From Takakia lepidozioides (lineage: Eukaryota; Plantae; Bryophyta): a DNA stretch of 64,000 bases. The notes beneath the pieces were generated by a model. That model was not told the DNA's origin. It did no database searches and was given only the letters and a program-made list of their open reading frames with translations. The stretch is from contig CM060731.1 of the NCBI GenBank assembly GCA_030704615.1, positions 17,112,001 to 17,176,000 of the forward strand, read 5' to 3'. This document shows, one piece after another, positions 1 to 64,000 of this stretch (position 1 is the stretch's first letter; every line of letters starts with the position of its first letter). Position numbers and translations under genes: made by a program.

Positions 1-25
1 CCTTTCAGCCAAGCAAGAAGAGAGG

Positions 26-21402: not shown

Positions 21403-24400
21403 ATGGCACCATCCAGGGACGAAGAGGAAGAGGAGGAAGAGGAAGTGTCGTCGAGTGATGTAGAGGGGGAAGCGGAGGCGATGGAGGAAGATGGGGAGCA
21501 GGGGAGGAAGGGGGGGAGGAGGGGGAGGGGGAGGGGGGGAGGAGGAGGAGGAGGAGGATCCGGAGGAGATTGCAGCGATAGAGGAGGCAGCGGCGGAGGT
21601 GGAGAATGAGGATGCATCCAAGTCTCCCGTGGCCGGGGGTGGATCGGGGGAGGAGAGTGATGGGGAGACGGATGGGGAGACGGAGGAGGATGAGAGAGGT
21701 GGGTCGAAGCTTGAGGTGGCGCGGAGGGAGAGGCAAAGGTTGCACGAGTTGAAGAAGCGGAAAAAACAGGAGGTGGAGAATTTTCTGCAGGAGCAGAATG
21801 CGCTTGTGGACTCGGATATGAATACCAAGGCGAAGGGGAGATTGAAGTTTCTGTTGCAGCAGACGGAGATCTTTGCGCATTTTGCGCAAGGTGCGCAGGG
21901 TTCGGATGTGCCGAAGAAGAATAGCAGAGGGCGACATGGGTCCAAGTTGACGGAGGAGGAGGAAGACAAGGAGTGTTTGCAGGAGGAGGAAGACCCACTT
22001 GCTACCAGGGGTACCAGGTTGCTCGTTCAGCCGTCTACCATTCAGGGGAAAATGAGGGATTATCAGTTAGCTGGGCTCAATTGGCTCATTCGGTTGTACG
22101 AGAATGGAGTGAATGGTATCTTGGCTGATGAAATGGGATTAGGGAAGACGCTGCAGACGATATCGCTGCTAGCGTATCTGAATGAGTTCTGTGGGATATC
22201 GGGGCCGCACATGGTAGTGGCCCCAAAGTCCACTCTCAGTAACTGGATGAACGAAATTCGCCGCTTCTGCCCTGTGCTGCGCGCTTTTAAATTCCATGGT
22301 AACCAAGAAGAGAGGGCGTACCAAAGGGACCAACAGCTAGTGGCTGGAAAGTTTGATGTGTGTGTGACAAGTTTCGAGATGGCCATCAAAGAGAGAACGG
22401 CTCTCCGGAAGTTTAGTTGGCGCTACATCATCATCGATGAGGCCCATCGCATAAAAAATGAATCCTCAATCTTAGCCAAAACCATGCGATTATTCTCTAC
22501 CAATTACAGACTTCTTATTACAGGAACTCCTCTTCAAAACAACTTACATGAGCTGTGGGCACTTCTGAATTTTTTGCTTCCGGAGATTTTCAGCTCCGCT
22601 GAAACTTTTGATGAGTGGTTCCAGATCTCGGGAGAGAATGACCAACATGAGGTTGTGCAGCAGCTTCACAAGGTGCTTCGTCCTTTCCTTCTGAGGCGGC
22701 TGAAATCTGACGTGGAGCGGGGCCTGCCACCTAAGAAGGAAACGATACTGAAGGTGGGCATGTCTCAATTGCAAAAAACCTATTACCGAGCGCTCCTGCA
22801 AAAAGACATAGATGCTGTGAACACAGGTGGGGAGAGAAAGAGGCTACTCAACATAGCAATGCAGCTACGCAAGTGCTGCAACCATCCATATCTTTTCCAG
22901 GGTGCGGAGCCTGGTCCACCATACTCCACTGGTGAGCATCTTGTTGAGACTGCAGGGAAGATGGTGCTTTTGGACAAACTGCTACCTAAATTGAAGGATC
23001 GCAGTTCTCGAGTGCTTATATTCTCGCAGATGACCAGGCTTTTGGACATTTTGGAAGACTACTGCCAGTACCGCACTTACCAGTATTGTCGGATTGATGG
23101 CAACACGAGTGGAGAGGACCGCGAGAGTGCGATTGACTCTTTCAATCAACCTGGCAGTGAGAAGTTTGTGTTTCTATTGTCCACCCGGGCGGGAGGTTTG
23201 GGTATCAACTTGGCCACTGCAGACATTGTCATTCTCTATGACAGTGACTGGAACCCGCAAGTGGATTTGCAGGCTCAGGACCGTGCACATCGCATTGGTC
23301 AGAAGAAAGAAGTCCAAGTGTTCCGCTTCTGCACTGAGTATACCATTGAGGAGAAGGTGATAGAGCGGGCATATAAGAAACTGGCATTGGATGCACTTGT
23401 CATCCAGCAAGGTCGCCTTGCAGAGCAGAAAGTGGTAAACAAGGATGATTTGTTGCAAATGGTGCGCTTTGGGGCAGAAAAGGTGTTTAGTTCTAAGGAC
23501 AGCACCATAACTGATGAAGATATTGATCGCATCATTGCCAAGGGAGAAGAGGAGACCGCTGAACTGGATGCCAAGATGAAGAAATTCACTGACGATGCCA
23601 TCAAATTCAAGATGGATGACACTGCTGGCCTTTATAACTTTGAGGACAAGGATGAAAAGGATGACGCTAAGTTGGACCTGAAGAGGATGATTGCAGACAA
23701 CTGGATTGAGCCACCCAAGCGTGAGCGCAAGCGCAACTACTCAGAGTCTGACTACTTCAAGCAAGCCATGCGCGCAGGAACCATCACCAAACCACGCGAG
23801 CCACGCATCCCTCGCATGCCTCAGCTGCATGATTTCCAGTTTTTCAACACACAACGGTTGACCGAGCTTTTTGAAAAGGAAGTAAGGTGTCTTTTGCACG
23901 CAAAGGCTGCTGGAGGGGGAGAGGACGTCAGGATCATTGAAGACGTTGAGGAAGTTCTCACAGACAAGGAACAAGAAGAGAAAGATCAGCTCTTGCAGGA
24001 AGGTTTCCAAAACTGGGCACGGAGGGATTTTGTTGCATTTGTGCGGGCCTGCGAGAAATATGGAAGAAATGACATGAAGAGTATTGCAAATGATATTGAA
24101 GGGAAGACTGAGGATGAAGTAGAGGCGTATTCAAAGGTATTCTGGAGTCGATACAAGGATTTGAATGATCATGAGCGGATAATTAAGAATATTGAAAGAG
24201 GTGAGGCTCGTATTTCACGAAAGGATGAGATCATGAAATCTATTGGTAAGAAGTTGGACAGGTATCGCAACCCATGGCTGGAGCTCAAGATCCAATATGG
24301 GCAGAACAAAGGGAAGCTTTACAGTGAAGAATCTGATCGGTTTTTACTCTGTAGTGTTCACAGATTGGGATATGGCAACTGGGAGGAGTTGAAGGCAGCA

Positions 24401-24712
24401 GTCCATGCCTCACCTGTGTTTCGTTTTGATTGGTTCGTTAAATCACGGACACCGTCAGAATTAGCACGGCGGTGTGACACGCTCATCCGACTGGTGGAGC
24501 GAGAGAACCAGGAGCTTGACCAGCGGGAGCGCCAGGCACGTAAGGATCAGAAGAAGTATATTAAAGGAAGTTCGTCACCAGCAAGGCGGACAGCGGCGAA
24601 TTCGTCATTCATGGAAGAGAGGGATGGCAATAGCAGTGGGTCTGGGCTAGTCAAAAAGCGCAAGGAAGCAAGCCTCGATGCTTTCAGGACAGTCGCAGGA
24701 AAAAAAAATTGA
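21403..24712 (+). CDS. ISWI: ISWI chromatin-remodelling ATPase (CHR11/CHR17-like), intronless
   Basis: Uninterrupted 1073-aa ORF 21491-24712 with SNF2 motifs (ILADEMGLGKT, DEAH, QLRKCCNHPYLF, QAQDRAHRIGQ) and a HAND-SANT-SLIDE C-terminus. The likely true start is ATG 21403 (MAPSRDEEEE...), in another frame before a G-rich tract at 21500-21545. Confidence 0.93.
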
Positions 24713-37633: not shown

Positions 37634-40031
37634 ATGGCAGTCAGGGGGGGACGGCCGATGGGTAGAGTGAAGGCGGTCATGTACCGAGCCGTTGTGCCTA
37701 CAATGCTGGTGTTTGTGTTTGCCACCACAGCCGCTCTGCTGTATGGAGACAGCTCCACTGCTGTACCGGTGAGCTATCTGTTTGCTCTCTTTAGTATTCT
37801 GCGTCTATCCTTCTGCGGTTTAGCTCATGTGAGGAAACAGAAGGTTTATTAGGGGCTAGCAGTGGGACTTGAACAGTCATGACTTCTCCAGCTTCGGGCT
37901 GGGGAGTGTGCTGCTTTATAGCCTGCGATATCGTCCTGGTTCCTGTGTAACATTCTGTGGCAAAGATTGCTTGTATGAGCTGAGTCTGAAGTGCACGCGC
38001 ATCTTGCATTGCCCAGTTTGACTTGAAGCTGACGTATCTGCAGGTGGGATTAGAGAAAACGTATTTGGCATCCGATCACGTGCATGCATACATGGCACGC
38101 ACATTCCTGGCCCTAAGACCAAAAGCGGATCCATTGAGGGCCAAAGTTGACAGTCTGTTCAAGCAAGTCAAGGACCAGATTGCCATAGTCAGTGCGTATT
38201 CTGCTTTTGCTCGGAAGGCCAAGTTGGATATGATGAAGGAGGTGCGCATATTTGCTGAACAGGCTAGGAACTACACGGAGTTGTTAGACAAGCCAGAAAA
38301 CAGAGCAATGCTGGAAAGTACTTCTGTTGACGAGGAGAACTTGAGGACATTTGAGAGGGACATTAGGGAGCGCCAGCGGGTGACAAGGCAGGTGATTATT
38401 GATGCCAAAGAGCTCTTTGACAACCAGCTCAAGATTCAGAAGCTGAAGGACACTATTTTTGCTGTGAATGATCAGCTGACAAAGACAAAGAAGCAAGGTG
38501 CTTTCTCGAGTCTCATTGCGGCAAAGTCCATTCCTAAGAGCCTTCACTGCCTCTCTATGAGGCTTATGGAAGAACGCATTGCTCACCCAGAGCGCTATCC
38601 CAAAGATAAGAATCCTGCCCCGGAGCTGGAAGATCCGGATCTTTATCACTACGCAATCTTCTCTGACAATGTGATTGCAGCTTCAGTGGTAGTTAACTCT
38701 GCAATCAAAAACTGCAAAGAGCCAGAGAAGCATGTATTTCACGTGGTGACAGATAAGATGAACTTAGGAGCAATGCAGGTTTGGTTCAAGATGCGACCAC
38801 CAGGGAAAGCCCACATAGACGTGAAAGCTGTGGAGGACTACAAGTTTTTAAATTCGTCTTATGTGCCAGTCCTGCGACAGTTGGAGTCAGCAAATTTACA
38901 GCGATTTTATTTTGAGAATAAAATGGAAAATGCCACAAAAGACTCTTCGAACTTGAAGTTTCGCAACCCAAAGTACCTGTCCATGCTCAATCATCTCCGA
39001 TTTTATCTGCCAGAGATGTACCCAAAATTACACAGGATACTTTTCTTGGATGATGATATTGTGGTCCAAAAAGATCTTACAGGGCTCTGGGAGATTGACA
39101 TGGATGGCAAAGTTAATGGGGCTGTTGAGACATGCTTTGGCTCCTTTCACAGATATGACAAGTACATGAATTTTTCACATCCATTAATTAGTGCAAAATT
39201 CAATCCAAAGGCCTGTGGTTGGGCTTATGGTATGAACTTCTTTGACCTGGATGCATGGAGGAGAGAAAAGAGCACAGAAGAATATCACTACTGGCAAACT
39301 CTGGTATGTTGGACTCCTCCACCCCACTGTTGATATTTAGTCTTGGTCCATACCAGATTGTGATAATTGCTTTGTTGATCTTGATGATAAGAGGTAGTCA
39401 TGCTGAGCTGTGGCAGAGAATGTTCTTGATGGCCTGCAACCATGTGTGTTGAAGTTGAGTTCAAGATTTTCATCTCTTATTTTCTTACTCTGTGAGAGAG
39501 GTTGGAACCTGTTGTTGCTTGACTTAGAACCTGCTCCAGTTACTGCTTGTGCTTCGGAACGTTTCTGTATGGAGGGCTGTGCTTTCTTAGAACACTCCAT
39601 ACAGATAGCGGGAACATGGATTTTTGGACCACAGCAGTGGAACAATTTGATGTTGGGCGTGTTGAGAGTAAATTAGCATTTGCTTAGTGGAAGTTGAGAT
39701 TTATGTAATAATAGGCTGACGCCACTTCTGTTTTGGTTTTTCTTCTCTTGTACAGAATGAGAACCGCACATTGTGGAAGCTTGGCACTCTACCCCCAGGG
39801 CTAATCACTTTCTACAAGACAACTAAGCCCCTCGAGAAGTCATGGCATGTCCTTGGGCTGGGATATAACCCTAATATCAGTATGGACAAGATCAAGAATG
39901 CTGCAGTCATCCACTTCAATGGAAACATGAAGCCTTGGCTGGATCTCGCCATGAATCAGTATCGAGAGTTTTGGACGAAGTATGTAGACTATGAGATGGA
40001 GTTTGTTCAAATATGCAACTTTGGGCTTTGA
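37634..40031 (+). CDS. GAUT8: Galacturonosyltransferase, GT8 family (GAUT8/QUASIMODO1-like), 3 exons
   Basis: Exons 37634-37768 (signal anchor), 38044-39303 and 39756-40031. Motifs IAAKSIPKSLHCLSMRL, YLSMLNHLRFYLPEMYP, FLDDD, LWKLGTLPPGL, HFNGNMKPW and terminal CNFGL. Confidence 0.93.
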
Positions 40032-45331: not shown

Positions 45332-45689
45332 CTCCGTCCCTTCTTCACCTCCGCCACCACACCCACAAGGAGGCAGAGCTCCGGGGCTGCTTGCAAATTC
45401 TTTCAGCAGCCTGCAACATGAACGAACGAGCGCGGACGAACGATTGTGAGGAGGAACGTGAGATGCTCCAGCACCTACTGGATCCTCCATTGCACCTTCT
45501 TCCCGGCTCAGAGGCAGCAGGGGCATCGCGGGCTGTGTTGCCCGTGTGCACCACCAACAACGTTCTTCATCTCTGATGCAGGGAAGCTTTGGGTGGGTGG
45601 GTAATCTGTAGGATAGCCACAGATTGAGAGTGGGGAGAGAAACGCAACCCAACTCACTTGGGTTGTACAAAAAGGCGTCGAGTAGCAGA

Positions 45690-46883
45690 ATGGAAGGCCA
45701 GATCCATCATGTTCAAGGAGATGGCGAGGTTGAGGGAGAACAAGAAGAGTGCCCCACGAGCAAAAAGACTTCACCTTGGCAAAGAATGAAATGGACGGAT
45801 GCCATGGTCAAGATCCTTATCGGTGTAGTGCTAGTGGTGGGGGAAGATAGCAGCATAGATGGCAATGAAGGAAACAACAGCAAGCGGAAGTCAGGTATTA
45901 TCCAAAAGAAGGGAAAGTGGAAGTCGATTTCCAGATTCATGATGGAGAAGGGGTGCTATGTGTCTCCTCAGCAGTGTGAAGATAAGTTTAACGACCTAAA
46001 TAAGAGGTTCAAGAGATTGAATGATATTCTTGGTAAGGATTTGGCTGCTAATGTGGTCGATGATCATTGCCTTTTGGAGGCCGTGGATCACATCCTTCCC
46101 AAAGCCAAAGAGGATTGCAGAAAGATTTTGATCTCCAAGCATCTGTTTTACAACGAAATGGCAGCTTTTCACAGTGGAAACAAGGCTGCACTGTCCTCTG
46201 AGTTAGAATTGCTGCCCTCATTGATGCTGAAGGGCAGAGAATTTGTCGAAACAGGAAAATGCAAGCATGAACAATGCGATGAAGATGATGAGGACATGGA
46301 CGACGACGACGAAGACGAGGAGGAGGATGTTGATGCTGATAATGACCAGGATGATGACGATGATGGGGTAGACGAGGATCTTGAGCCGTTGGCGGATCAC
46401 CTCAGTAAACGCCGGAGGCTGTCAAAGAAGCTGGAAGAAGGCGGTTTAGGTTTATCATCATTATCTTTGCACAATGTTGCGAATGGCATACCCAGGAGTG
46501 TTGAGAATATTAATGCAGACTCAATGGGGATCTTGCAAGTAAGCGCAAAGGCATCTCGGGAACACCAACGCTGGATGAAGAGTAGGACCGTTCAATTAAA
46601 GGAGCAAAAGGTTGGTCTGCAAGTGGAGGCTATCAATCTTGAAAAACAGCGCTTCAAGTGGCAAAAATTCAGCTGCAAAAAGGATAGAGAATTGGAGAGA
46701 TTAAGGCTGGAGAATGAGAGGATGAAGCTTGAGAATGAGAGGATGACGCTACAGTTAAAGCAAAGGGAACTTGAAATAGACTCCCAAAGGTCGGAGACAT
46801 CAATGACCTCTCTGGCGCTTTTATTGGATAGATTGCAGGCAAAGGAGCCGACTGGTCCCAACAAACCTAGCGAGTTAAGTTAG
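45690..46883 (+). CDS. Trihelix (Myb/SANT-like) transcription factor, intronless
   Basis: SPWQRMKWTDAMV, QKKGKWKSIS..M.EKG..VSPQQCEDKFNDLNKRFKRL, SKHLFYNEM, an acidic tract, and a C-terminal coiled coil LEKQRFKW..FS.KKDRELE. First ATG at 45690. Confidence 0.9.
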   Translation: MEGQIHHVQGDGEVEGEQEECPTSKKTSPWQRMKWTDAMVKILIGVVLVVGEDSSIDGNEGNNSKRKSGIIQKKGKWKSISRFMMEKGCYVSPQQCEDKFNDLNKRFKRLNDILGKDLAANVVDDHCLLEAVDHILPKAKEDCRKILISKHLFYNEMAAFHSGNKAALSSELELLPSLMLKGREFVETGKCKHEQCDEDDEDMDDDDEDEEEDVDADNDQDDDDDGVDEDLEPLADHLSKRRRLSKKLEEGGLGLSSLSLHNVANGIPRSVENINADSMGILQVSAKASREHQRWMKSRTVQLKEQKVGLQVEAINLEKQRFKWQKFSCKKDRELERLRLENERMKLENERMTLQLKQRELEIDSQRSETSMTSLALLLDRLQAKEPTGPNKPSELS

Positions 46884-49374: not shown

Positions 49375-52300
49375 CTAGGGGGGACCACGAAGACCAGCAG
49401 CATCATTCCATGCAGCGTGAGTGCTCCCATCGATAGTGGCATGCGTGTTGTCTTCTGCAGGTCTGTGAGATTGGCCACCGATCACAGCCGCACAGTCTGG
49501 ACATCTCGAAGTCTGCATGGGTCCTCCGCATTCTCCCACCACATAAAAGTGGCCATTGGGGCATTTATACCAGTGCCCTCGCCCTCCCACTTCCGCAGTC
49601 ATGACTTTGAGCAATGACCTGCTTGAAAATGTGGTGCTCTTTCGATTTCTCTTTCATTGTCATAGCTGCCCTGCATTGAGGATCATGTTTGAGTACCACA
49701 TCACACAGCAGCAAAACTTGGCTATGTTCGCCCATTAATCTGCCGAGGCATTGTGCCCACAGTATAGTTGCCTGGATGCCTAGTGCCTTATCAGCCCTCG
49801 TGATTGCACAGTCGACACCGATGTTGTTCAATTTGGAACCAAGTGCAGCACATGAGCTACTGGAAGTTCCAATCACGTTGGTCACATCAGCTGCAAGAGG
49901 GCTTCTCTCGACGACTAGGCGGAGGCAAGAGATGGCTTCCTTTCCTTGATTAAGGGCAGAATGTGCACAACCCATGCCAAAGTGGGCTTGTAGAAGCTCT
50001 GGATTTTGCCGTAGAGCTTCAATGAAATGGCCAAGCGCCATTATAGGATCTGCTGTCTTCAGCAATTCATTCCCTTTCCTTGTCATCTCAATGGCGTAAA
50101 TTCTTCGCTTTATTTCATCAACTTGAGCCAGCCTTGTCTTCACAGCAGTCGAGTAGCGGAATGTCTGCTGGATAGGTGTTTTGCAGGCGGGGCTGCAAAA
50201 AAGACAGATTTAGTTAATGCTCATGATCTTCATGAATGCAGATCACTTTAGAACTATCGTTGTGGCATGCAGGCAACTCTCTTGAAAACCGCGCGTGAAT
50301 GATGCTAGCTACTAGGAGCTCTGTACTGAAAATCGACTTGTAAGAAAACATCCACCAGCTCCTCGAGCAACCTGCATTACCGAAAAATTACTGATCTTGA
50401 CTTGTATATCATGTATGCAACATGTTGATTGGAATCCGGTATGTGAAGTCCTAGATGATCACTGTAATTTGGTCAGGATCTCGTTGGCACTTGTTTATCA
50501 TGAGGTCTGCTTATGTACAAGTACGTCAGAAATGTTCAAATTTCTGCCATAGCAAAGGATGAGACTTACCACTGCTTAAGCTTCACAGCGACAGAGGCGC
50601 TAGTACTGTCACAGTCTGTAGGCACGGAGGTTGCGTCGTCATGGTCCATCCAACCATCCAAGCCCGTGACCTCAAACACATGTCCGCAATCCTGCAGTTG
50701 TATGAAACGATCGGCTTCATCGAACTCACTGAGCTTCATTTGCGCTATGACATCAAATTCTTCAGGGTGACAGCGCCGGCATTTGGGGCATGGCTCCCCA
50801 CACAGTCCGCAACATGGATGCTTGCAGGTCCGAAGGGTCTTCTTGCATGGCACATTGCAGCGTGGCCGACGACATATTTGGTAGCACCTGTTGATCAACA
50901 ATCGCGAGGGTCAATGTTAGTGAAAAGAGCGCCCGCTTTTATGCTTCTCTAGATCCGCCAGCACTTGATGTTTCTAGATCAACATAAATCAGGCAGGCAG
51001 GCCTCTATTCAATTCATAGGGACAGTATGGCTGAGGCCCTCGTCATCATGAGGCTCCTGCACTTTGACCTCCCTATGAGTGCCCATCTTCTATGATCATG
51101 ATCAATCTAGATAGCTGTCAAAATCAAGCCATTCTCAAGTAGATGCCATTCATTGGATTACCTGAGCTTGCAACGAAAGTGCTTGCAGCGCCAGGCGCAT
51201 GGCTCAATGCAGGGTCGGCACTTAACTCCACACCCATGTGAGCAACGGCTGTGCACACAACGCCTCTGGCACTTTTGACGGCAGGGTGGACAAGAAAGCA
51301 AGCAGCCTTCCTGACAGGGGTGCGAGCATGGCATGATTCTTGCACATTTTTCTTTGCAAGGAACATGGTTAACCCCTTCCTGGCAGGTGCCACAAGTCCC
51401 TTTACAGAAGTGCCCACACTCAGGAAGCACACTTGTGCATGGCTCACGGCAGAGGTAAGCTGCAATGTCTTGAGAGCAAGGCACCTGAGCTGTGTGACCA
51501 CATGTTAGGACTTTCTCAATCTCTACTTGGCAGAGGTAAACTGCAACATCTTGAGAGCAGGGCACCTGAGCTGTGTGACCACATGTTAGGACTTTCTCAA
51601 TCTCTACTTGGCAGAGGTAAGCTGCAATGTCTTGAGAGCAGGGCACCTGAACTGCGTGACCACATGTCAGAACTTTCTCAATCCTTACTTGGCAAGTCTC
51701 TGGGACTACACATTGGTTTCCACATCGTCTTGGACAGGAATGACCGCAGTCCACCTTTTTCTCACATGGACGTTGGCAGACATACGTATCCACAGCTTGT
51801 GAGCAGCTGATGGTTGCATCATGCCCACATTGAGGCAGTAACTTTGAGACATTCTTGACACAGGGGGGACATTCACTCTCTCCATGGCACCGACATATGC
51901 AATTATGGCCACAGAACTCATGGTTTCTAGCACATGGTTTGGGACATGCAACGTTTTCATGGCCGCCGGGATGGCACCTCCTCGGGCAGGCGTGCCCACA
52001 GTCTAGCTGGTACAGGCAAGGCCTGTTGCAACCCCCATCTTGTACAAGGTTGAAGTCGATAGCGTTGGTGATTTTCGTCTCTGTCTCTGGATGATTTTGG
52101 CAGCTCAAAATAAGCTCAGGGCCCAAGCATTGCTTGCTGTTGAGGCTGTCTATCACTTCCTCCCACAGGCTGCTCCTCAGGCAGAGGAGTTTGGAATTTC
52201 CAAACATGTACAGCCCAATGCGTGCCCTTGACAGCGCAACACACACGCGATTAGCCACACCAACGAAGCCAATTTTTCCTAAGCCATCCTTTCCGGGATG

Positions 52301-55300
52301 CTGGTTGCTTCTTACAAGAGATAATATGATAATGTCGCATTCTTCCCCTTGGAAGTTGTCCACGCTGGTGACTGTTGGATACACGACATGTGTGCCTTGA
52401 AGAGGCACAGACAGGTCTGCAGTAGACGTTTCCGGTGCTGTCAACAAAGTATGCTTCAACACTCCCACCTTTCTGTCTGCAAGAAGGCCTTTAATAAGCG
52501 AAATCTGGCCAGAATACATGCTGAGAATGGTGATGTGCTCGGGGATATATCCTTGCTTTAGAAGGTAGGAGCAGAACTCTACTACAAGCTTAGCCTCCTC
52601 TACATTCTTCTTGCTCCCAGCATCACCGCTGCTGCTCTCTTCAGCTGTGTGATCCAGAAAGAACACATTACTTCTGACTCCTTTAACATCGTCAAAAGTG
52701 GACACAGAGGGGTGATTACGAAGCCGGGGGCCGTAGATGGGAGTGATGAGGGTAGCAATGGAAGGTCGCATCCTCCGTTGCATTTCCAGTGTCACATGCT
52801 GAACACCACCTGACAAAATCACTCTACTTCCATCAGTGACATGCAGAAAATGACAGCTGAAAATCTACGTCAGGCTCATGAATGCATGGAAGTCAGATTC
52901 ACTACTAGCAAGTGTACAGGCAAGGTGTCAGGTTCAGCTCAATTGATACTAGAGAGGCCTACTGGTTACACATGATGCATGCAGAGTTCTAGATACAGAC
53001 AGCTTAAATGATGCGAGCTCGGCTTTCTCCACCTGGCTCTCCAGATTAGAATCATACTGATCATGAAATATTGCAACATCTGAAAGGAGTCAGGAATTTG
53101 TGTTTGCACACTCGTTGTATCTAGGAAGAAAATCACAGCATCTGGAAAAATATGTTACTTGTTGCCAGGCGCTCAAACATGGACACGTCCAGTTTATGTT
53201 GGACTGCAAGGTTATACACTGCAACTGATGGACGCAGCTGCAAATGATCCCCAATCAATATGAGATGCTTCGTGAAAGGGCTGAGGCAGGCCACAATGTG
53301 GGCCTCCAGAACCTCTGCTGCCTCTTCCACAATAACGATCTCCGGTTTCAAAGCCACCAGTAATTCATGGTGACGTGCTGCTGATGTTGTAGTCATCCCT
53401 ACAACTCGGGCATTCCGAAGAAGAGACAGACTGATTTCACTCTCAATTGTCGCTACTGCTCGGCACGCCTCCTCATACCCGGAAAGAAGAGTTTTAATCT
53501 GTGTCCTAGTCTTTTGTTTTATCTCTTCCAACCAGAAATTGTGTAACTGATGCCTAGATGCTGCATCAAGAAGCCAAACATCGGGATAACCAACTATGTC
53601 GTGAAGGGGATACGCTTGGTCCTCTCGCCAACCTTGATCAGTCCCAGATTCGGCCCTATAGGGATCCTCTTCTGGCCCGCGGTTCATGTCCACATCAACT
53701 TGATCCTCGACATGCATAGACTCAATCTCTTTGGACAGGCTGTCATAATATGGACCATTATGAGATACCCCTCCAGTTCCAGCAGAATTTGCAATCAGGC
53801 CTGCATATCCAATGTGTGTTCAAATTATCAAGAACTGTGCTCCTCTCTTCGGAAACTACTGCACCTAGGTGTCGATAAAGAGCACAAACAGGACGACTGA
53901 TTTAAAATGTCGGTCCATGACAGATGCTAGCAATTGATCTACATATATTCAAACAAAGATACAAGTTTACAGTTCCAGGGGGATCCACAGATTCCTGCTG
54001 GGCTTTGTACAATGAGCACTAGATTAAGGTTTCACGTGCGATTGATTATTTACGAGTCCTTGTCAGTGCAATGATCTGCCAAAACCGAAATGGATTCATG
54101 ATCTAGATTGTGTGCCGCGCGGGATAAATTAATACCTAGGTTGCACCTACAGTACCTTCAACTGAGTCGCACTGCAGGGTACTCTCCGTGTGGTCGGGTC
54201 CAAACGCCTCTGCAGATGATGAGCTGCTTTCTGAACTACACTCTCCGTCACTCCAGGTGTCTACTTCATCCTGCAATGCTGAGTAGGGATTAGAAATCTT
54301 CATACGATCTTCCAGGTCAAACTCATGACCCACAGAGTTCCTCAAACCTTGATAATTCATGCGATAGCCGGGATCATATGAAGATTGAAGCCAGACCCCC
54401 ACAGTCGTCTGGGAGTTTTTCGCATTTGCAACGTTAAAGAACAGATGGGCAATCTGGTCCTTAGTTGCCACGCCACGCAGAGATTCCTTTGTCACCACTT
54501 TCATGTCCATGACTTTCAGAAGCTGAGTCAAGCTCTCCTCCAGTGCTTCTTTTGCCCTTTTTGATGTCTGGAGTTCATGGTGGTGAGCAATGTCAAGGCT
54601 CTTTGCAGACCTTTTCTCTTGTATAAGTGTATGCAAGCAGCGTTCCTGCAAAGTTTCGCTTTTGCTTCTGGCACCAAGACGGATAAGACAATTCTCATAC
54701 TTGTAAATGCCCTCTAAGAACTGATCCAGTGCATGGTTGGTAAAACAAACCACCAAGATGGGTCCTTGAACTAGAGCATTCTCAGTTTCCAGGGAAGGCC
54801 TCCTATGATTCAGACCCTTCAGCTCGGCCCCCGAGCCGCAACCCCGCCCGTTCCCCCACCTCCCCCTCCCCCTACCTTCCCCTCGCCCCGCCCGCGCGCC
54901 AGTGCTTGAAGAGGATTGTAGTCCTACGTCCAACCCGTAGACGTTTGCAAGTAAGACTCGCACTGCAAGCAGCCCTATGAAGGTTTTGCCTGTGCCCGGG
55001 GGCCCTTGGATTAAGGCAATTTCCTTTGTCAATGCATGTCTCAGCGCCCTCATCTGGCTGCAGTCAAGTGAAGAGGTGAATGACGGCCATTCTTCCAACA
55101 CGTTCAGGGTTTTCCTCCCGATATCTCTCTCCAACTCCGGAAAAATACAGCTCATATCGTACTGTAGGCCATTTTTACCCCCCAGAAGATAGCTGGGTGG
55201 ATTCACCATGGGCTCAAGGTTGACGAGGTGCCTTGAGAATGGGATATTCTCCATTTCCTCCTGCTGCAAACACTTCAATGCATGTGAATATGCCTCGAAA

Positions 55301-58300
55301 TATGCGGAGGAGGACTCCACCATGACATAGACCTTGCCTATGTGCAATAAACACTCTGCTGGTCCGATAAAGCGGACATCAATCACGCCCTTTTCTATAG
55401 CGCTAACATCTCGATGTGCCACTATTGCACAGCCTTGGATTGACTGGAAATCGTCCTGAGATATGCATAGCAAAGACCCCATCATCAGACTTTGATCAGC
55501 CTCCAAACGAGGGTCTCCCCTTGAAGGTTTGGCCCAGGTGTCAAAGGACAAACGGAATTCCGTGCCAGAAAAACCACATCGAAGGCCTAAGAGCTTGACA
55601 TGACGATAGACGCGCAAACCTTGGACCCCATGCCTGCCATGCGCGGCTGGCATTTGGTAGGACCGAATCCCGGCTCTGAGTGGCTCAATATAATCTTCCC
55701 GCAGAAGCAGAAATTGGGTTTCCAGATACTCCAATATCGATGTGTAGCGCACACCAACAAGGTTGACTGGCAGTGCAACATGCTCACGAGATAGAAGCTC
55801 ATCCTCACTCGGCATTATAGACATGCTCTGGAACTCCTTTCCCTGGCAGAGACAACATGTGTATTTAAAGGCAAGTTAGTCGAGCCCTACTCTCGCCCTA
55901 CTGCATGTACATTTGAAAATATTCTTTCCGAGTTGAACTACTCCATGTACATCATGTATGATCCTTGGGTTGCCGGAGTGCTGAGCTAGGTAATGAAACC
56001 TGCCGGAGAACAGGTCTATAGATTTGCATTTCTGTTATGGCACCTCTGTACAGTAATTATTTGTTAGATCAGAGCCATGATGTCCATACTCGTACGTGAC
56101 TGGAGAGCCAAAGATGATACATACATGTGGACCACTTGGTCAACTTGAAATCTGAGTGTACTAATTCACGGACCTCGGAGGAGCTGGACCTCCGAGACAC
56201 CGCAGCAGAGGAGAGCTCGCTGATCAACGGAGATCATCTATGAACATACAGGTCGCAATATAATAATTGGACATAATTCCCGGGATGTGCCAACTGGTAG
56301 ACTCAGGAACTTAGTCCTGATCAGAGAGAATCTTGTTCAAATAGTTTGACCGACAATTCATCTTGAGGAAACCTTAGGGAAAAGAACAGGTCTCGAGTTA
56401 CATGTTATGTACAGTACCTTCAAGGTGTCGTGTGGTTTCTCAGTTGCCAGAAGCCACCGTTGTTTGTCCCGGTGCGCAAGTAAGCGAGCTACATCATTTG
56501 CCAGCGCGTCCTTGGCTGAGCTGCCAGGGAGCGACTCCAAATGGCTCTTCACAGCATCCAGAGGAATCACCTTCCATCCATCTGAGGTGCGAGTTTGTAT
56601 CTCTTCTAGGACTGAGAGGTAAGCCTGCACAACGTCCATGGATTCATTTACGATTTGCACTTGAGAGATCTCAAACATAGCAAGTTTCATCACCAAACCG
56701 ATTCACTGGCGCTGCTAGGCAGTTAACATAGTCCGTATCTCATCACTACAGTTGACCGATTTTAGTACTCGTGACGTGTTTTGATGCCGATCTGTCTGCA
56801 TGAATACATCTAGCCCATTAAAGGTACAATATATATATGGGCAATGTGAAAGGTGGTAGAGTCCAACATGGATCTGATGTGAACTGTTATGTGCGCTGGA
56901 GACCACAAGATGTGCAGGTTGTATTTGCTCGACAAGAATATTTGCACTGAGATGGCGTTCTACTCGAGCATGATTGCGTAGTGCTTACGTAGCTTATGAA
57001 ATAACTCTACAGTTCAATTTCTCCGTGCAGCCTGCAAGATTAAATACTCCTGCTACATGACCCCAAAGTTTCTCACTATATCAGTTGACACACAATACGA
57101 GTGAAGTACTTAATTTAATTTAAAGTAAGCCAGTACCTGTAGGGCTCTGGAGCTTGGTCTCGCAAGTCCTTGGAGATGGGCTGACAAATTTGTCAGAAAT
57201 GATGACCTTGGCAAAATTCCGTATATTTTGTTGGTGCTTTCAAGCATCATGCTTGACCGGATCTCTTGTTTTCCCAGTAACGAGATTAGCATCTCAATAA
57301 CGGTCTCCGATAGATTGTGCTGCTCCACCAGATCTGAGAGCTCGGCTAGACCCTGACCATTGCTCAAGTAAACTATATTCTCTGAAGCAGGTTTTTTGAG
57401 CTGAATTTGTAACCATGCTTCCATCTGGTTAGATGAACGGAACCGAACTACACGACTGGTCACATCATTACAGTGCGAAAATCTGCATCTCGTCCCAGAC
57501 CTGCATCTTCCAACCTGGAAATTGCAACAAATTATCTTACCCCCTCCCCTACTTGGTGATCCTGGCGCTCGCAATACTGGAGGTCGATAGAACTGCTTAC
57601 TGTTAACATGACGGATTATTGTGAACTTGGGTAGGGGAATGTAGACTGCCTGTTGTTGCAAATACAGCAGTGCCTGCTGGAGTGATTCGTCATCGTCAAC
57701 AACAATTTTCTCTCCAGAAGTGTCACAATATCGAGCTTCGAGGCTTAGCTGTACTGAGCCTGATTTTAATAACCCTTCATTGAGACTAGAGAGAGCAGAA
57801 AAGGATTCGACCATCAGTTTCCGGAAGATACTGAATTCGCCCGACAAACTAGGCAGGACCACTATCTTGACGCTGTTTTCATACTCCAGCTTGATACGGA
57901 TTTTACTTTCACAACTTGAGACCTGCACGCGCCAACATGTGTGCGCAAATTATGTGAAACTGACATTTCTTAGCGGACAGTTCGACCACAAATCCCGTAT
58001 ATCTCCCGTACATATGCATGCATGATAGATATATAATCTGAGTACACATTGTAATCAAGCTAATCGGTTCAAATTATGTACAGTACTGGCTTCAAATGCA
58101 CATCCCTCATGACTTATATCATGTATAAATTTGAACGACCTCAAGGATCAATGTTAAAGGTCCGAAGTTTAGGTCAAGGATGCCGTAAGCACATTGTAAA
58201 CACTAAGGGTTCGATCTAGATGTCCATATCGAGTACTGGAAAGACACACAGGGACGTAACACTGCGTCGAAGACATCAGAATGTCATGCAGGAATCGCGG

Positions 58301-58662
58301 CCTCATATCATCTGCACGAATCTGTGGGATGGCTGTGCAGGTAAGGACATTATGAACTCTACACAGTAGCTGGATTCCAATATGTAAGGTATGAAAAGAA
58401 AAACTTGTATACATGGAGTGAGACTTACACATTGTAGCTCTCCCGGCACAGTCATGATACGGACTGTAGATAACAGCTCCGAACTCTCCTCTAAGTTCTT
58501 AGGCTCCTGTGGTGGATTAGATTGCAGGCTCGTCGCAGACCCGACAGAGAGGGGAATCCAGCGATCAGGCTGGTGCCACACCCTGCTGCTCTTGGGTCCT
58601 CTGTGCTTGGAGTGCGACTGGGTCTCTTCAACTGGGAACGCCTTATTTGACCCTCTACCCAT
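49375..58662 (-). CDS. ZNFX1-like SF1 RNA helicase / E3-ligase with added PB1, CCCH and TPR-like domains (copy 1; frameshift before the RZ finger)
   Basis: Exons 58662-58429, 57922-57137, 56624-56418, 55842-54156, 53800-53159, 52809-51162, 50887-50570 and 50192-49375, all junctions in phase. ZNFX1-type motifs: YLETQFLLLREDYIEPLR, IQGPPGTGKT, VCFTNHALDQFLE, VEEAAEVLEAH, IGDHLQLRP, VDNFQGEECD, VALSRA, a CGH-x-C NF-X1 array, IQLQDCGHVFE...CPACKTPI, and RZ finger HWYKCPNGHFYVVGECGGPM..SRCPDC..VIGGQSH. Confidence 0.9.
51449..51692 (-). repeat. 81-bp coding tandem repeat, three copies, expanding the NF-X1 finger array
   Basis: Near-identical units start at 51449, 51530 and 51611, each encoding EKVLTCGH..QVPCSQD.A.YLCQVEI (27 aa). 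Confidence 0.9.
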
Positions 58663-61600
58663 ATTTTCCGACTTTCTCTGTGGCCCTTACCTTTCAAGCG
58701 ATTGTTCGAGCAGATCAGCTCCCACCCACCGATAAAGTTCTACTTATATACCCTTTCCTCTGCCTCTCGCGGAATCTCTCCGATCAGCCGATATGGACTT
58801 TCTCATGTGCAACTATCTATCAATCTCTAGCACACGGACTGAACTCCTCCTTTGCTCCTTCAACAACCGTATCAGGCTTGTATCCCTTCGGCTCCCTCTA
58901 TAGTGATCAGTGCAGACGCTGGCGGCGGCGTTCGAGCGTTGTGACGTCAACTTCATTGATGAGACCCCTCCATGCAAAATATCAGCCTCACTTGAAATGA
59001 TGGCGTATTTACGCCGTCGCTCGTACTGATCACGGACGGACGATGAGCAGCCAAGGAACATTCCAAAGTTGTTATCGATTTGATGACAACCGCCTTTCCT
59101 CGTCTACCTCACCCATCGCCGTCACACTTCTCTGCCTCGGAGGCGCAGGATTTTGAAGGACACCCATGTGATGTTTCGCAACAGAGATCTGTTGGTCTGG
59201 TAAGTATGTATATGTGTATATATGTATATGTTGATCTCAACACGATACCAGACCAACTTAAGATCACAGCCTTCAGGGAAGACTTATGTGTGATCATAGC
59301 GTATACTACATCAATGGGCTCAGATCAAAGGACGAGCTTCAGCAAAAGCGAGCAAGAATCATACTAAGAGCAGGGCCGATCAGATAGGGACAGATCGCTA
59401 ATTGAGCGCAGAAAATTCTATAGTACCGTCGCAAGAACGCAAACTTGGCAAGGAGCTCAGAATCAATCGATTACAAGTACTGTTTAATCACCACAGAAGG
59501 TGATTTCAGCGATCATGCAACTAGGGCTCATTCACAGAGATCCGAGATCCAATTGCCGCAGGATTGCAACCGAATCAGTACTGTGGGATGCAGGAACAAC
59601 AACTTGGTAGATTGTGTACTCTCGATCTGGTGCGTTGTATGCGATCAAAGAATCCAGATGATGCATGCACAGGTCAATCCTGTTTCGCTGTAAGTAAAAG
59701 TTATGACTGCTTTTCCCAACCTGTTAAAATTGCCCAAAAGCTTATTTTGTATAAATATTATATATATATATATGTCTACTGGGGACTATTTTTGGGGCGT
59801 GGCAAGTAGTTGTCAGTGTGATTATCATCCTATTTTCTGCCCAATCTCAGTATTTATTTATCCAACTCAGTCTAAGAAATGACTCACAAAAGCATGCGGG
59901 CCATTCCTAATCTTCCAATTTGAGCTCTTGCACTACCCTTGCTGGTATCACCACTCTGGTATGATGAGTATGGAGGCTGAATACAGTACATGTTTTGGAC
60001 CATATCAAACACACATTCTTCAATACTTTCAAGTCTGGATTTGCCGCACTCTACTTGTATTTTATATGTCATTGGGCTTGCTTAGAATCGCTCTTGTGGT
60101 ACTCTAGGCGGAGTTGATATTAGCTAGTATGAGTTTCTACACCATTGTCAACTGATATTGGAGTTTGTAAGTCGCATTGGTGCCATTCCTGATACCCTAG
60201 AGGTACTAGAATCCAGGTTTTTTCTTAGTATTCCAAACCAGTGTTGAGGACATGTGCAAATTTTGTACTACCAAGAGACTCGTGGTATTCCAAAACCACC
60301 ATACCACACCAACAGTGGTGCCTAGTACCTACCGTTCGATACGACTGACTACAAATTCAGTCATATATATGCAGTCATAAAACTGTAATCTGTTGGCGAC
60401 TGATCCCTCCGTGTTCAGTTAGTACGACCGACGCCATGCGCGCCGTCGCTAAGTAGTTATGTAGTACGCCGTCATTTGGAAGCGAGGCTGATATTTTGCA
60501 TGCACGGGTCTATTCAATGCAGTTGTGTCCCTTCACTCGCTGTAGAGGGAGCGCAAACGCTCAAAGGCATCCTGTTGATCAACATCTGCATCCCTGAGAA
60601 GCTAATATGCGTGCGGTAGAGATTGAGAGAGTTGTGAGGCAGCCCATATCGGGGGATTGGAGAGAGTCGAGGCAGAGGAAAGGTTTCCCATTTCGGTGGG
60701 TGGGGAGCTGCTCATTTGAAGGCTATGGGGAGAAAACGGCCTGAAAAAATGGGTAGAGGATCAAATCCAGTTGACGAAACCGGGGCGAAATCAGGAGGCG
60801 TGATTAATACCAGGGTGGCGCGTCGGCCAGATCGTTGGATTCCCCTCTCTTTCGTGTCTGCGAACAGACTGCATGGGTACTCTGAGCAATGTAATCCACC
60901 GCAGGAGGCTAAGTCGAAGTTAGAGGCAAGTTCGGAGGTGTTGTCTACTGTCCCTATCATGTCTGCGCCGCCGAGAGACCTTCAAAGTGTAAGTCTCACT
61001 CCATGTTTTCTTTTAGTAGGTCTTGCATATTACTCAAGAGAATGACTTTAGCATCAACCTGGACAGAACTTAATAACTTACCTGCGGGCCATCCCACATA
61101 TTCTTAGCCAAGCAAATCAGTAAACTTCAAAGTGCCAATACTTCGTATCAGTCGTATTCTTGAATCAGGGATAACGAAAGATCGTGCAGATGATATCAGG
61201 CCAAGCTTCAAGCGACTGGGCTGCAAATGACATTCTCATATCTTAGACGTGTACAGTGTGTCTTTCCAGTCGTCGAAGTGGACAACCCTTTTAGTATTTA
61301 CATTGTGCATCTTGAAAAAATTTCCTACTCCCTGCAGGTCTCAAGTTGTGAAAGTAAACTGCGCTCGAAAATCCGTATTAAGCTGGAGTATGAAAACAGC
61401 GTCAAGATAGTGGTCCTGCCTTTATCGGGCGAATTCAGTATCTTCCGGAAACTGATGGTCGAATCCTTTTCTGCTCTCTCTAGTCTCAATGAAGGGTTAT
61501 TAAAATCAGGCTCACAGGTAAGCCTCGAAGCTCGATATTGTGACACTTCCGGAGAGCAAATTGTTGTTGACGATAACGAATCTCTCCAGCAGGCACTACT

Positions 61601-64000
61601 GGAGTTGCAACAACAGGCAGACATTCCTGTACCCAAGTTCACAATTACTGTAACTAACAGTTCGCCGTTCTATCGACCTCCAATATTGCTAGCGCCCGGA
61701 TCACCAAGTGGGGGCGGGGGAAGGATAATTTGTCGCAATTTCCAGGTTGGAAGATGCAGCTTTGGGGCAAGATGCAGATTTTCGCACAATGATGTGACCA
61801 GTCGTGTACTTCAGTTCCGTTCATCTAAGCAGATGGAAGCATGGCTACACTTTCAGCTCAAAAAACCTGCTTCAGAGAATATAGTTTACTTGAGCAATGG
61901 TAAGGGTCTAGCCGAGCTCTCAGATCTGGTGGAGCAGCAGAAGCTGTCGGAGACAGTTATTGAGATGCTCATCTCCTTACTTGGAAAACAAGAGATACGC
62001 TCAAGCATGATGCTTGAAAACACCAACAAAATATATGGAATTTTGCCAAGGTCGTCATTTCTGACAAATCTGTCAGCCCATATCCAAGCACTTCCGAACC
62101 CAAGTTCCAGAGCTCTGCAGGTACATGTGCCCCGGTTCACCTAATTAATTAACGTGTTGATATAGCGAGAAATATTGGGGTCGTGTAGCAGCCCTGGGTT
62201 CTTGCAGGCTGCACAGAGAATTGTACTAGTTATACAGCCAATCGTGCTCGATTCCGACGCCCTTTAGTCCAAGTAAGTGGCTCGGAAAAATACTAGGCCT
62301 GCACATCGAGTGCACATCTTGTGGTCTCCAGCAGTCACATCATGTGCATGTCCTTTGGACCCTACCATCTGATGGCAATGATCGCTACAGCCAGAGCTGC
62401 ACATCAGAATGTGAATACTAAAATCCGTTGACTTCAGGAAGTACGTGAACAGCCCATCTGAAGTGAGCACGAGCAGTGAATCGGTTTGGTGATGAAACAT
62501 TTTATGTTTGATCTTACAAATCGTATTGATGGAGATCGCGTGTGCAGGCTTACATCTCAGTCCTCGAAGAGATACAAACTCGCACCTCAGATGGATGGAA
62601 GGTGATTCCTCTGGATGCTGTGAAGAGCCATTTGGAGTCGCTCCCTGGCAGCTCAGTCAAGGACGCACTGGCAAATGATGTAGCTCGCTTACTTGCGCAC
62701 CGTCACAAACAACGGTGGCTTCTGGCAACTGAGAAACCACACGACACCTTGAAGGTACTGTAACATGTAACTTCAAGGACCTACCGGTTTTCCCTATTGA
62801 TCAATTGTCGGTTAAACAGAGCTTCTTTCTCTCTTATAAAGCACCAAATTTCATTTCATTTCTAAGTCTACCAGTTGGCACATATGCCAAGTTACATACA
62901 TGAACATTCTATGTATATCATCTATAGACTTACTGTATTGCAACCTCTATACATCTTCGCACATCTGCTTTTGTATGATCTGAATAGCTCTCCTCTTGAA
63001 AGCATTGGTGCGCGGTGTTTCTTAGGCCCTGGAAGACGTCCTTGGATTCTAGTAGTCTTTCAAGTTGACCACCTGGTTGGTCTACATCATCTTTGGCTCT
63101 ACAGTCCGTTCCACCTACATGTCACATGTCTAGATCACATGTTTACGTAGATGCCTATATGTTCAGAAAATGCAGATCAATCGTTCTGGACAGGTTTCCT
63201 CACTTAGCAGCACTCACAACAACCTGAGGATCATGTACCTACAAGGAGGAGCTGTTTCAATGAGCAATCTTGAAAAGAATATTTCTGTACACAGTAAGTA
63301 CTAAGGCTCTTGAGACTAAATCTGTTGGCATACGTGTATGTCTCTCGCAGGGAAAGGAGTTCCAAAATATGTCTATAGTGCCGAGTCAGGATGAGCTTCT
63401 ATCTCGTGAGCATGTTGCACTGCCACTCAACCTTGTTGGTGTGCGCTACACATCGATAATGGAGTATCTCGAGACCCAATTTCTGCTTCTGCGGGAAGAT
63501 TTTATTGAGCCACTCAGAGCCGGGATTAGGTCCTACCAAATGCCAGCCGTCCAGGCCAGCCATGACAGGGTCCAAGAGTTGCGTGTCTATCGTCATGTCC
63601 AGCTCGTAGGACTTCGATGTGGTTCTTCTGGCATGGAATTCCGTTTGTCCTTCAGGGTCAAACCTTCAAGGGGAGCCTCCCGCTTGGAGGCTGATAAAAG
63701 TCTGATGATGGGATCTTTACTATGTATATCTCAGGATGATTTCCAGTCAGTCCAAGGCTGTGCAATAGTGGCACATCGAGATGCTACGGCTGTAGCAAAT
63801 CCTGGTATGATTGATGTCCAATTCATCGGACCAGCAGATCAGTGGTTACTGGACATAGGCAAGGTCTATGTTATGGTGGAGTCCTCCTCCGCATATTTCG
63901 AGGCATATTCACATGCATTGAAGTGTTTGCAGCAGGAGGAAATGGAGAATATCCCATTCTCAAGGTACCTCGTCAACCTTGAGCCCATGGTGAATCCACC
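55198..64000. repeat. Large inverted duplication: arms about 55198-59045 and 60400-64000 (continuing beyond the window), spacer about 1.35 kb
   Basis: Reverse-complement matches cover exons and upstream DNA, e.g. CATGCAAAATATCAGCCTC (about 58971) vs GAGGCTGATATTTTGCATG (about 60484), and CCCACCCACCGA (58721) vs TCGGTGGGTGGG (about 60693). Confidence 0.9.
60725..64000 (+). CDS. ZNFX1-like paralogue (copy 2), divergently oriented; runs off the window end
   Basis: Exons 60725-60988, 61338-62120 (PB1 + CCCH), 62548-62754 and 63351->64000. They are open, in phase and have the same intron positions as copy 1, with closely similar peptides. Confidence 0.88.

What the first reader, a model, noticed from the sequence alone, without database searches (positions are those of the whole stretch)
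49375..58662. Plant ZNFX1-like protein with an unusual PB1-CCCH-helicase-NFX1-RING-TPR-RZ architecture: candidate RNA-sensing ubiquitin immune module
Seen: eight phase-consistent exons encode a full ZNFX1-type core plus an N-terminal PB1 domain (KIRIKLEY...ARYCDTSGEKIVVDDDESLQQAL), a C-x7-C-x5-C-x3-H finger, a TPR-like block and a terminal RZ finger that keeps the ECG cysteine and GGxxH histidine. Established: animal ZNFX1 is an RNA-binding SF1 helicase in antiviral immunity and RNAi inheritance; S. pombe Hrr1 is a relative; the RZ finger of RNF213 mediates RING-independent ubiquitylation; PB1 domains polymerise front-to-back (p62/NBR1, ARF-Aux/IAA). I do not know of ZNFX1 in Arabidopsis or of a PB1- and TPR-fused ZNFX1. 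Inference: a self-polymerising RNA sensor/E3 ligase acting in antiviral or transposon defence in an early-diverging plant, possibly linked to selective autophagy.
Basis: partly seen in the sequence, partly recalled or inferred. Interest (0 to 1): 0.92.

Follow-up and report, generated by a model that had tools for sequence, protein, structure and literature searches.

The report
Plant PB1-ZNFX1 RNA-sensing ubiquitin ligase
Non-flowering plants and their closest algae carry a relative of the animal antiviral RNA sensor ZNFX1 with an added self-polymerising (PB1) domain, apparently undescribed, but this particular copy has a frameshift that cuts off one of its two ubiquitin-ligase parts.

Summary
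The gene is real and is a true ZNFX1 (human ZNFX1 E 1e-58, UPF1 6e-4). The order PB1-CCCH-ARM-helicase-NFX1 stalk-Miz RING-TPR-RZ lies in one reading frame in a 7.1-kb spliced-form contig and in Riccia, Selaginella, Adiantum and Mesotaenium proteins. These form one streptophyte clade (100/99) and share two intron positions with this gene, pointing to vertical descent. Gymnosperm members lack PB1-CCCH; no angiosperm member was found. A survey of eight plant PB1 families lacks this one, and I found no paper on plant ZNFX1; databases already hold the architecture unremarked. Correction: the RZ finger is out of frame here. A net +1 shift near 49605-49617 ends the protein at 2,049 aa. Short-read contigs list no indel there, so it is probably real. 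A Cryptomeria paralogue breaks at the same junction. A head-to-head duplicate (dS 0.15) lies 2.1 kb away. No expression was shown. The scan had noted that duplicate and CSD-ZNFX1-PARP genes elsewhere in this genome, unchecked.

The parts
58429..58662 (-). Exon 1 (78 aa), lineage-specific N-terminal extension with a conserved RWIPLS motif (58563-58546)
   Evidence: motif kept in the paralogue and fused in-frame to PB1 in relative L007
57137..57922 (-). Exon 2 (262 aa): PB1, CCCH finger, first part of ARM domain
57614..57904 (-). PB1 domain, type I/II (beta-1 Lys and OPCA acidic face)
   Evidence: Pfam E 0.017 here, above cut-off in homologues; homologue model Z 12.8 to NBR1 PB1; motifs
57473..57529 (-). 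CCCH zinc finger C-x7-C-x5-C-x3-H
   Evidence: paralogue copy E 3e-9
57137..57430 (-).
   Evidence: homologue model residues 153-320 match human ZNFX1 ARM 9eve, Z 17.3, rmsd 2.8 A over 160
56418..56624 (-). Exon 3 (69 aa): second half of ARM domain
   Evidence: following intron shared with Riccia and Cryptomeria
54156..55842 (-). Exon 4 (562 aa): ZNFX1 1B barrel (about 55623-55309), Walker A (55005-54982), RG-rich insert (54900-54835), start of 1C insertion
53159..53800 (-). Exon 5: acidic end of 1C insertion, deviant Walker B EEAA (53330-53313), motif III, RNA-stacking Tyr
51162..52809 (-). Exon 6: second RecA lobe with motif VI Arg (52249-52220), NFX1-type zinc-finger stalk from 52102, including a recent 81-bp triplication (51448-51694)
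50570..50887 (-). Exon 7: last NFX1 finger and Miz/Z-RING (DCGH at 50691-50680); its CxxC is completed across the phase-2 intron
   Evidence: 54% identity to mammalian ZNFX1; intron shared with Riccia and Cryptomeria
49565..50192 (-). Exon 8, main frame: Miz end with Lys at the linchpin position, long helix, three TPRs (about 50090-49640), then stop TAA 49567-49565
49605..49617 (-). Net +1 frameshift inside the ubiquitin-binding helix that precedes the RZ finger
   Evidence: no indel listed in DNA contigs at two-copy depth
49375..49608 (-). RZ finger, intact in sequence but out of frame
   Evidence: Pfam 2e-26; up to 79% identical to plant homologues
58663..60748 (.). Shared divergent intergenic region (2,086 nt between start codons)
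60749..64000 (+). Head-to-head paralogue: exons 60749-60988, 61338-62120, 62548-62754, 63351 to beyond the window; all open; dS 0.15, dN/dS 0.47

Best explanation
This gene is a member of an undescribed streptophyte subfamily of ZNFX1 that added PB1 and CCCH in front of the ARM domain and has three TPRs between its two ligase domains. Shown: domain content, ZNFX1 clade, conserved catalytic residues. Inferred from human ZNFX1: the helicase is idle until single-stranded RNA enters its groove; the ARM domain pairs molecules; the Miz domain binds a ubiquitin-charged E2 and passes ubiquitin to the RZ cysteine and on to the protein itself, bound proteins or RNA. Inferred from p62/NBR1: the two-faced PB1 chains molecules head to tail, so that RNA-bound enzyme condenses into ubiquitin-rich bodies that sequester viral or transposon RNA. 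The CCCH finger adds RNA selectivity and the TPRs recruit a partner. This copy is one of a recent head-to-head pair and has lost the RZ half through a real frameshift. If expressed it is a Miz-only ligase, like C. elegans ZNFX-1, or a duplicate starting to decay.
For: Helicase hits human ZNFX1 at 1e-58, UPF1 at 6e-4. Walker A, EEAA Walker B, motif VI Arg, the Tyr1043 equivalent, Miz zinc ligands, a hydrophobic E2-contact residue and a basic linchpin are kept. ARM Z 17.3, PB1 Z 12.8, TPR fold TM 0.8 by target. Whole architecture in one ORF in P0154, Riccia fluitans, Selaginella, Adiantum, Mesotaenium. Streptophyte clade 100/99 with liverwort, lycophyte, fern and gymnosperm subclades; two shared introns. 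Human mechanism: bioRxiv 10.1101/2025.10.14.682297 and PMC13710534. Exonic indels between the two copies all keep frame while intron indels do not; dN/dS 0.47. RZ-less paralogues recur: Cryptomeria has an in-frame TAA at the same junction with a decaying RZ behind it; a Mesotaenium model ends there.
Against: No functional data for any plant member. No RNA evidence for this locus. The plug helix of human ZNFX1 cannot be aligned in plants, although the region is acidic. PB1 and CCCH are absent in gymnosperm members, and Marchantia polymorpha keeps PB1 but lacks ARM and the ligase end, so PB1 is dispensable for, or separable from, the core function. The indel table hid ten weaker rows, so an assembly error is not fully excluded.
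Confidence: 0.58

Rival explanations
1. The plant family works mainly like S. pombe Hrr1 and C. elegans ZNFX-1: a helicase partner of RNA-dependent RNA polymerase that holds silenced transcripts in condensates and sustains small-RNA amplification. The ligase is secondary, which is why RZ is lost repeatedly.
For: Hrr1 and ZNFX-1 do this (PMC9276528); C. elegans ZNFX-1 lacks RZ; several plant paralogues lack RZ or the whole ligase end while keeping the helicase.
Against: RZ is the best-conserved part of the plant proteins (60-79% identity against about 33% for TPR), and Selaginella, Calypogeia, ferns, gymnosperms, Riccia fluitans and Mesotaenium each keep a complete Miz+RZ copy.
Confidence: 0.25
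2. This copy is a young pseudogene; only the neighbouring paralogue is functional.
For: Frameshift in the last exon; no RNA contig laid; dN/dS 0.47 is relaxed; a weaker PB1/CCCH Pfam score than the paralogue's CCCH.
Against: One lesion in 6,150 coding nt, in the last exon, where nonsense decay is not expected; all other indels keep frame; splice sites intact. The RNA runs laid nothing for the paralogue either, even at 85% likeness, so both may be silent in those tissues or inducible.
Confidence: 0.3
3. The frameshift is an assembly error (for example one extra A in the AAA run at 49608-49606) and the gene encodes the full PB1-to-RZ protein.
For: RZ is perfectly preserved; a 3-A run lies at the site; ten indel rows were not shown.
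Against: Short-read contigs cover the site at two-copy depth (110) and list no indel among the best-supported rows; an error would be contradicted by both copies. A 4-nt insertion fits the homologue helix better, and 4-nt indels are common between the two copies' introns.
Confidence: 0.15
4. The RZ finger is attached conditionally, by ribosomal +1 frameshifting or by an alternative acceptor at 49618, giving RZ-plus and RZ-minus forms from one gene.
For: RZ intact; a phase-compatible AG at 49618; breaks at the same junction in other lineages.
Against: The acceptor at 49618 would remove the second half of the Miz CxxC and all TPRs; no good donor lies inside exon 8. The Cryptomeria break is an in-frame stop with a decaying RZ, not a conserved shift site, and all other homologues are simply in frame.
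Confidence: 0.04

Closest known systems
Human/animal ZNFX1 (PDB 9q9z, 9eve)
   Same: ARM, SF1 helicase with 1B barrel and EEAA Walker B, NFX1 stalk, Miz/Z-RING and RZ finger in the same order, with catalytic residues kept.
   Different: Adds PB1 and CCCH in front; the stretch between Miz and RZ is three TPRs with no sequence similarity to the mammalian helical region beyond its first 31 residues; basic (Arg/Lys) rather than Gln linchpin; plug helix not recognisable; RZ out of frame in this copy.
C. elegans ZNFX-1 and S. pombe Hrr1
   Same: Same helicase family; ZNFX-1 also lacks RZ but keeps Miz, like the predicted product of this copy.
   Different: No PB1, CCCH or TPR reported for them; their role is small-RNA amplification. 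Not compared directly here.
p62/SQSTM1 and plant NBR1
   Same: N-terminal type I/II PB1 with both faces; best PB1 structural match is NBR1.
   Different: They are ubiquitin readers (ZZ, LIR, UBA); this is an RNA-binding ubiquitin writer. No UBA domain; the WIPL motif in exon 1 is only a weak, lineage-limited ATG8-motif candidate.
Eight plant PB1 families of PMC7051960 (ARF, Aux/IAA, NLP, NBR1, Kinase, Kinase-derived, Phox, CBS)
   Same: PB1 with beta-1 Lys and OPCA motif.
   Different: No helicase-fused family is listed; the words helicase, AAA, NFX and CCCH do not occur in the paper. This would be a ninth family.
Database entries 'NFX1-type zinc finger-containing protein 1' of Selaginella moellendorffii and Riccia fluitans
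   Same: Same clade and architecture.
   Different: Automatic names only; many models are split or truncated; no paper found that describes them.
RNF213
   Same: RZ finger with catalytic Cys/His.
   Different: AAA+ ATPase giant; no RNA helicase.

Membership tests
ZNFX1 | SF1 helicase closer to ZNFX1 than to UPF1 | tested here: met
   E 1e-58 vs 6e-4; Pfam ZNFX1 domain 6e-18
ZNFX1 | Deviant EEAA Walker B, Walker A, motif VI Arg | tested here: met
ZNFX1 | N-terminal ARM domain | tested here: met
   model of homologue P0154, Z 17.3 to 9eve; exons 2-3 align to it
ZNFX1 | NFX1-type zinc-finger stalk after the helicase | tested here: met
   39% identity over exon 6 to mammalian ZNFX1
ZNFX1 | Miz/Z-RING ligase domain | tested here: met
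   DCGH and CxxC, hydrophobic E2 contact, Lys linchpin
ZNFX1 | RZ finger in frame at the C-terminus (not universal: C. elegans lacks it) | tested here: not met
   out of frame in this copy; met in 12 plant homologues
ZNFX1 | Acidic plug helix in insertion 1C | tested here: inconclusive
   region is acidic but not alignable
ZNFX1 | RNA-stimulated ATPase and ubiquitin-ligase activity | not testable with these tools
   needs biochemistry
PB1 domain, type I/II | Beta-grasp PB1 fold | tested here: met
   Z 12.8 to NBR1 PB1, 11.6 to p62; Pfam above cut-off in six homologues
PB1 domain, type I/II | Beta-1 lysine and acidic OPCA motif both present | tested here: met
   Lys in all 11 rows; acidic clusters kept, the first weakened in this copy
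PB1 domain, type I/II | Self-polymerisation | not testable with these tools
   needs filament or puncta assay
TPR domain | Three helix-turn-helix repeats | tested here: met
   TM 0.81-0.86 by target to 3-TPR domains
Hsp70/Hsp90-binding carboxylate-clamp TPR (CHIP-like) | Clamp Lys four residues before the first-helix Asn | tested here: inconclusive
   mostly Thr or a hydrophobic residue, never Lys, at that position; clamp positions recalled from memory, so a lead only
Selective autophagy receptor (p62/NBR1) | UBA domain and LIR/AIM | tested here: not met
   no UBA in Pfam scans; WIPL motif is weak and limited to this lineage
UPF1 | Helicase closest to UPF1 | tested here: not met
SDE3/MOV10 or senataxin | Helicase closest to these families | not tested
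   no direct comparison or outgroup was available; ZNFX1-specific domains make it unlikely

The most novel reading that the evidence does not exclude
Non-flowering plants have an RNA-triggered ubiquitin defence that flowering plants lost: PB1-ZNFX1 polymerises on viral or transposon RNA, ubiquitylates it or its proteins through the Miz-RZ relay, and co-polymerises through its PB1 with NBR1 to send the RNA bodies to autophagy. RZ-less duplicates, arising independently in several lineages, act as tuning or scaffold subunits.
Probability: 0.2. Interest if true: 0.88.

Novelty: new variant of a known kind. Interest (0 to 1): 0.64.

Why it matters
ZNFX1 has just been shown to be an RNA-activated, polymer-forming ubiquitin ligase, and the papers I could read do not mention plants. 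A vertically inherited streptophyte branch shows that the ARM-helicase-Miz-RZ module predates the split of plants and animals or reached plants before they left the water, and that it was remodelled with a dedicated polymerisation domain, reduced in gymnosperms and apparently lost in flowering plants, which is why Arabidopsis genetics would have missed it. It adds a ninth plant PB1 family. It makes two questions testable in Riccia, Ceratopteris or Selaginella: whether RNA-triggered ubiquitylation is an ancient antiviral mechanism independent of interferon, and whether polymerisation is needed, since PB1 can be switched off by point mutation. The copy in this window is a poor experimental subject because its RZ finger is disconnected.

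Tried and rejected
Structures were therefore predicted from a natural single-ORF homologue (P0154), not from this gene's product. Exon 2 as query in the search for homologous proteins gave nothing, which reflects the length window and says nothing about kin; the Atlas gave no usable hit and the Atlas fold search only unrelated PB1 proteins. A hidden intron restoring the RZ frame was rejected: homologues are collinear and no good donor exists. The alternative acceptor at 49618 was rejected because it would destroy Miz. Recent horizontal transfer was rejected: the clade follows plant phylogeny and shares introns; the sister group (an Acaulospora protein, support 46/13) is unresolved, and the tree has no non-ZNFX1 outgroup. 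RNA evidence: none; runs X6 and X7 laid nothing. The organism could not be named; the gene falls outside the liverwort, lycophyte, fern and gymnosperm subclades, so a moss or hornwort is my guess. Ishidate 2018, Wan 2018 and Otten 2021 were not held, so passing mentions of plant ZNFX1 there cannot be excluded. P0173's locus was not on record.
Full report
What is there. The minus strand from 58662 to 49565 holds eight exons separated by seven GT-AG introns of 274-575 nt. Phases match, no exon or split codon has a stop, and the total is 2,049 codons plus TAA. The spliced protein was never joined for a search; every search was exon by exon. Pfam finds PB1 (weak), a CCCH finger, the ZNFX1 domain, both helicase lobes, TPR and an RZ finger at 2e-26.

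The correction. The RZ finger is not in the reading frame of exon 8. The TPR frame stops at 49567-49565 and the RZ sequence lies in the +1 frame. In homologues the last TPR helix runs directly into the RZ helix, mostly with four residues where this gene has 16 nt. The shift falls in the helix that holds human Ile1835, which binds ubiquitin and is needed for RZ activity. No short intron fits, and the one phase-compatible acceptor would cut the Miz domain in half. DNA contigs of the likely source sample cover the site at two-copy depth and list no indel among the best-supported rows, though ten weaker rows were hidden. I put the lesion at about 85% real. The RZ sequence is still up to 79% identical to plant homologues, so the lesion is recent.

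The family. An exhaustive search with exon 4 returned plant proteins first: Calypogeia, Mesotaenium, Riccia, Marchantia, Ceratopteris, Cryptomeria, Selaginella, Ginkgo, Taxus. A 7,119-nt Logan contig encodes the entire order PB1-CCCH-helicase-TPR-RZ as one uninterrupted 1,992-aa ORF; it groups with Adiantum and, having no introns, is most likely a transcript. Riccia fluitans, two Selaginella genes, Adiantum and Mesotaenium have the same order, with PB1 above Pfam's cut-off in six homologues. A metagenome contig from a closer relative has the exon 1 motif fused in frame to PB1 and the same exon 2/3 and 3/4 boundaries. The PB1 fusion is therefore real at family level, although no read spans the junctions of this copy. 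A maximum-likelihood tree puts all 20 streptophyte rows, including both window exons, in one clade at 100/99, with liverwort, lycophyte, fern and gymnosperm subclades. Two introns sit at identical positions here, in Riccia and in Cryptomeria. This points to vertical descent from before land plants. Gymnosperm members lack PB1 and CCCH, and a gymnosperm-clade contig has in-frame stops upstream of its start. No angiosperm protein appeared among the named hits; nor did Physcomitrium, Anthoceros or chlorophytes. That is 'not found', not proven absence.

Structure. An AlphaFold2 model of the homologue's first 335 residues (pLDDT 85) has a PB1 domain (Z 12.8 to NBR1) and a helical domain whose best match is the ARM domain of human ZNFX1 (Z 17.3, rmsd 2.8 A over 160 residues). 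The plant protein thus keeps the animal dimerisation domain and adds PB1-CCCH in front of it. The PB1 has the beta-1 lysine in all 11 aligned copies and both acidic clusters, the type I/II pattern of self-polymerising PB1 domains. The C-terminal model shows a three-repeat TPR fold between Miz and RZ, where mammalian ZNFX1 has a sequence unrelated beyond 31 residues. The helicase keeps Walker A, the ZNFX1-specific EEAA Walker B, the motif VI arginine and the Tyr1043 equivalent; Miz keeps its zinc ligands, a hydrophobic E2 contact and a basic linchpin. The human plug helix cannot be aligned.

The duplicate. A second copy starts 2,086 nt away on the plus strand and runs off the window. Exons are about 92-97% identical in DNA (exon 1, 80%), dS is 0.15 and dN/dS 0.47; exonic indels keep frame and intronic ones do not. 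Both copies were under selection for most of their history. Loss of RZ in one paralogue recurs: a Cryptomeria copy has an in-frame TAA at the same junction with a decaying RZ behind it, and a Mesotaenium model ends there (its DNA could not be checked). C. elegans ZNFX-1 also lacks RZ.

Mechanism. Shown: domains, residues, clade, frameshift. Inferred from human ZNFX1 (bioRxiv 10.1101/2025.10.14.682297; PMC13710534): RNA binding switches on the helicase, ARM pairs molecules, and Miz hands ubiquitin from E2 to RZ and on to targets, also in trans. Inferred from p62/NBR1 (established knowledge; PMC6978347 abstract): PB1 chains the enzyme into filaments or bodies. The most likely role is sequestering and ubiquitin-marking viral or transposon RNA (0.58 for the whole statement). 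An Hrr1-like role in small-RNA amplification is the main rival (0.25). For this copy alone, a Miz-only product and early pseudogenisation (0.3) cannot be told apart, since neither RNA-like run laid anything on it or on its paralogue.

Novelty. The ZNFX1 papers searched do not mention plants, searches pairing ZNFX1 with non-seed plant names found nothing relevant, and a survey of 485 plant transcriptomes lists eight PB1 families without a helicase (PMC7051960). Three key papers were not held. The architecture is already in public databases under automatic names, and the core is a known family, so this is a new variant of a known kind.

Noticed in passing
window 2-4056 (+): Three abutting long ORFs (stop at 1064-1066, frame change near 3277-3337) without Pfam hits; language-model features match P-element/THAP9-type transposases at 0.94-0.97. 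A broken P-like transposon in a land plant would be unusual; lead only.
   Followed up: partly
window 21491-24709 (+): ISWI chromatin remodeller (SNF2-HAND-SANT-SLIDE) in one 1,073-codon ORF without introns; possibly a retrocopy.
   Followed up: no
window 51448-51694: Three 81-bp copies at 92% identity: a recent triplication of one NFX1 finger, lengthening the stalk.
   Followed up: partly
window 54796-54937 and 55013-55200: DNA contigs at up to four-copy depth, one of two-copy depth lacking the RG-rich insert: further fragments of exon 4 exist elsewhere in the genome, perhaps the Pack-CACTA fragments noted by the scan.
   Followed up: partly
window 58546-58563 (-), paralogue exon 1, L007 near 2245-2286: Conserved RWIPLS motif in an otherwise variable N-terminal extension; fits W-x-x-L but lacks acidic flanks.
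   Followed up: partly
L006 7076-11741 (Marchantia polymorpha): The M. polymorpha copy keeps PB1 and helicase but shows no CCCH, ARM, Miz, TPR or RZ and has a long branch; annotated as two genes. A poor model for the family.
   Followed up: yes
P0008, P0015: A neighbouring ZNFX1 clade carries cold-shock domains (with CCCH in P0008) at the N-terminus: the N-terminus of ZNFX1 is a swap site for RNA-binding or assembly domains.
   Followed up: partly
P0011, P0027, P0168: A second, fast-evolving fern/gymnosperm subclade whose models end before TPR and RZ.
   Followed up: partly
window 8552-9958, 37990-39330, 45612-46880 (+): Ordinary neighbours: SAP-domain protein, GT8 glycosyltransferase, trihelix factor.
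   Followed up: no
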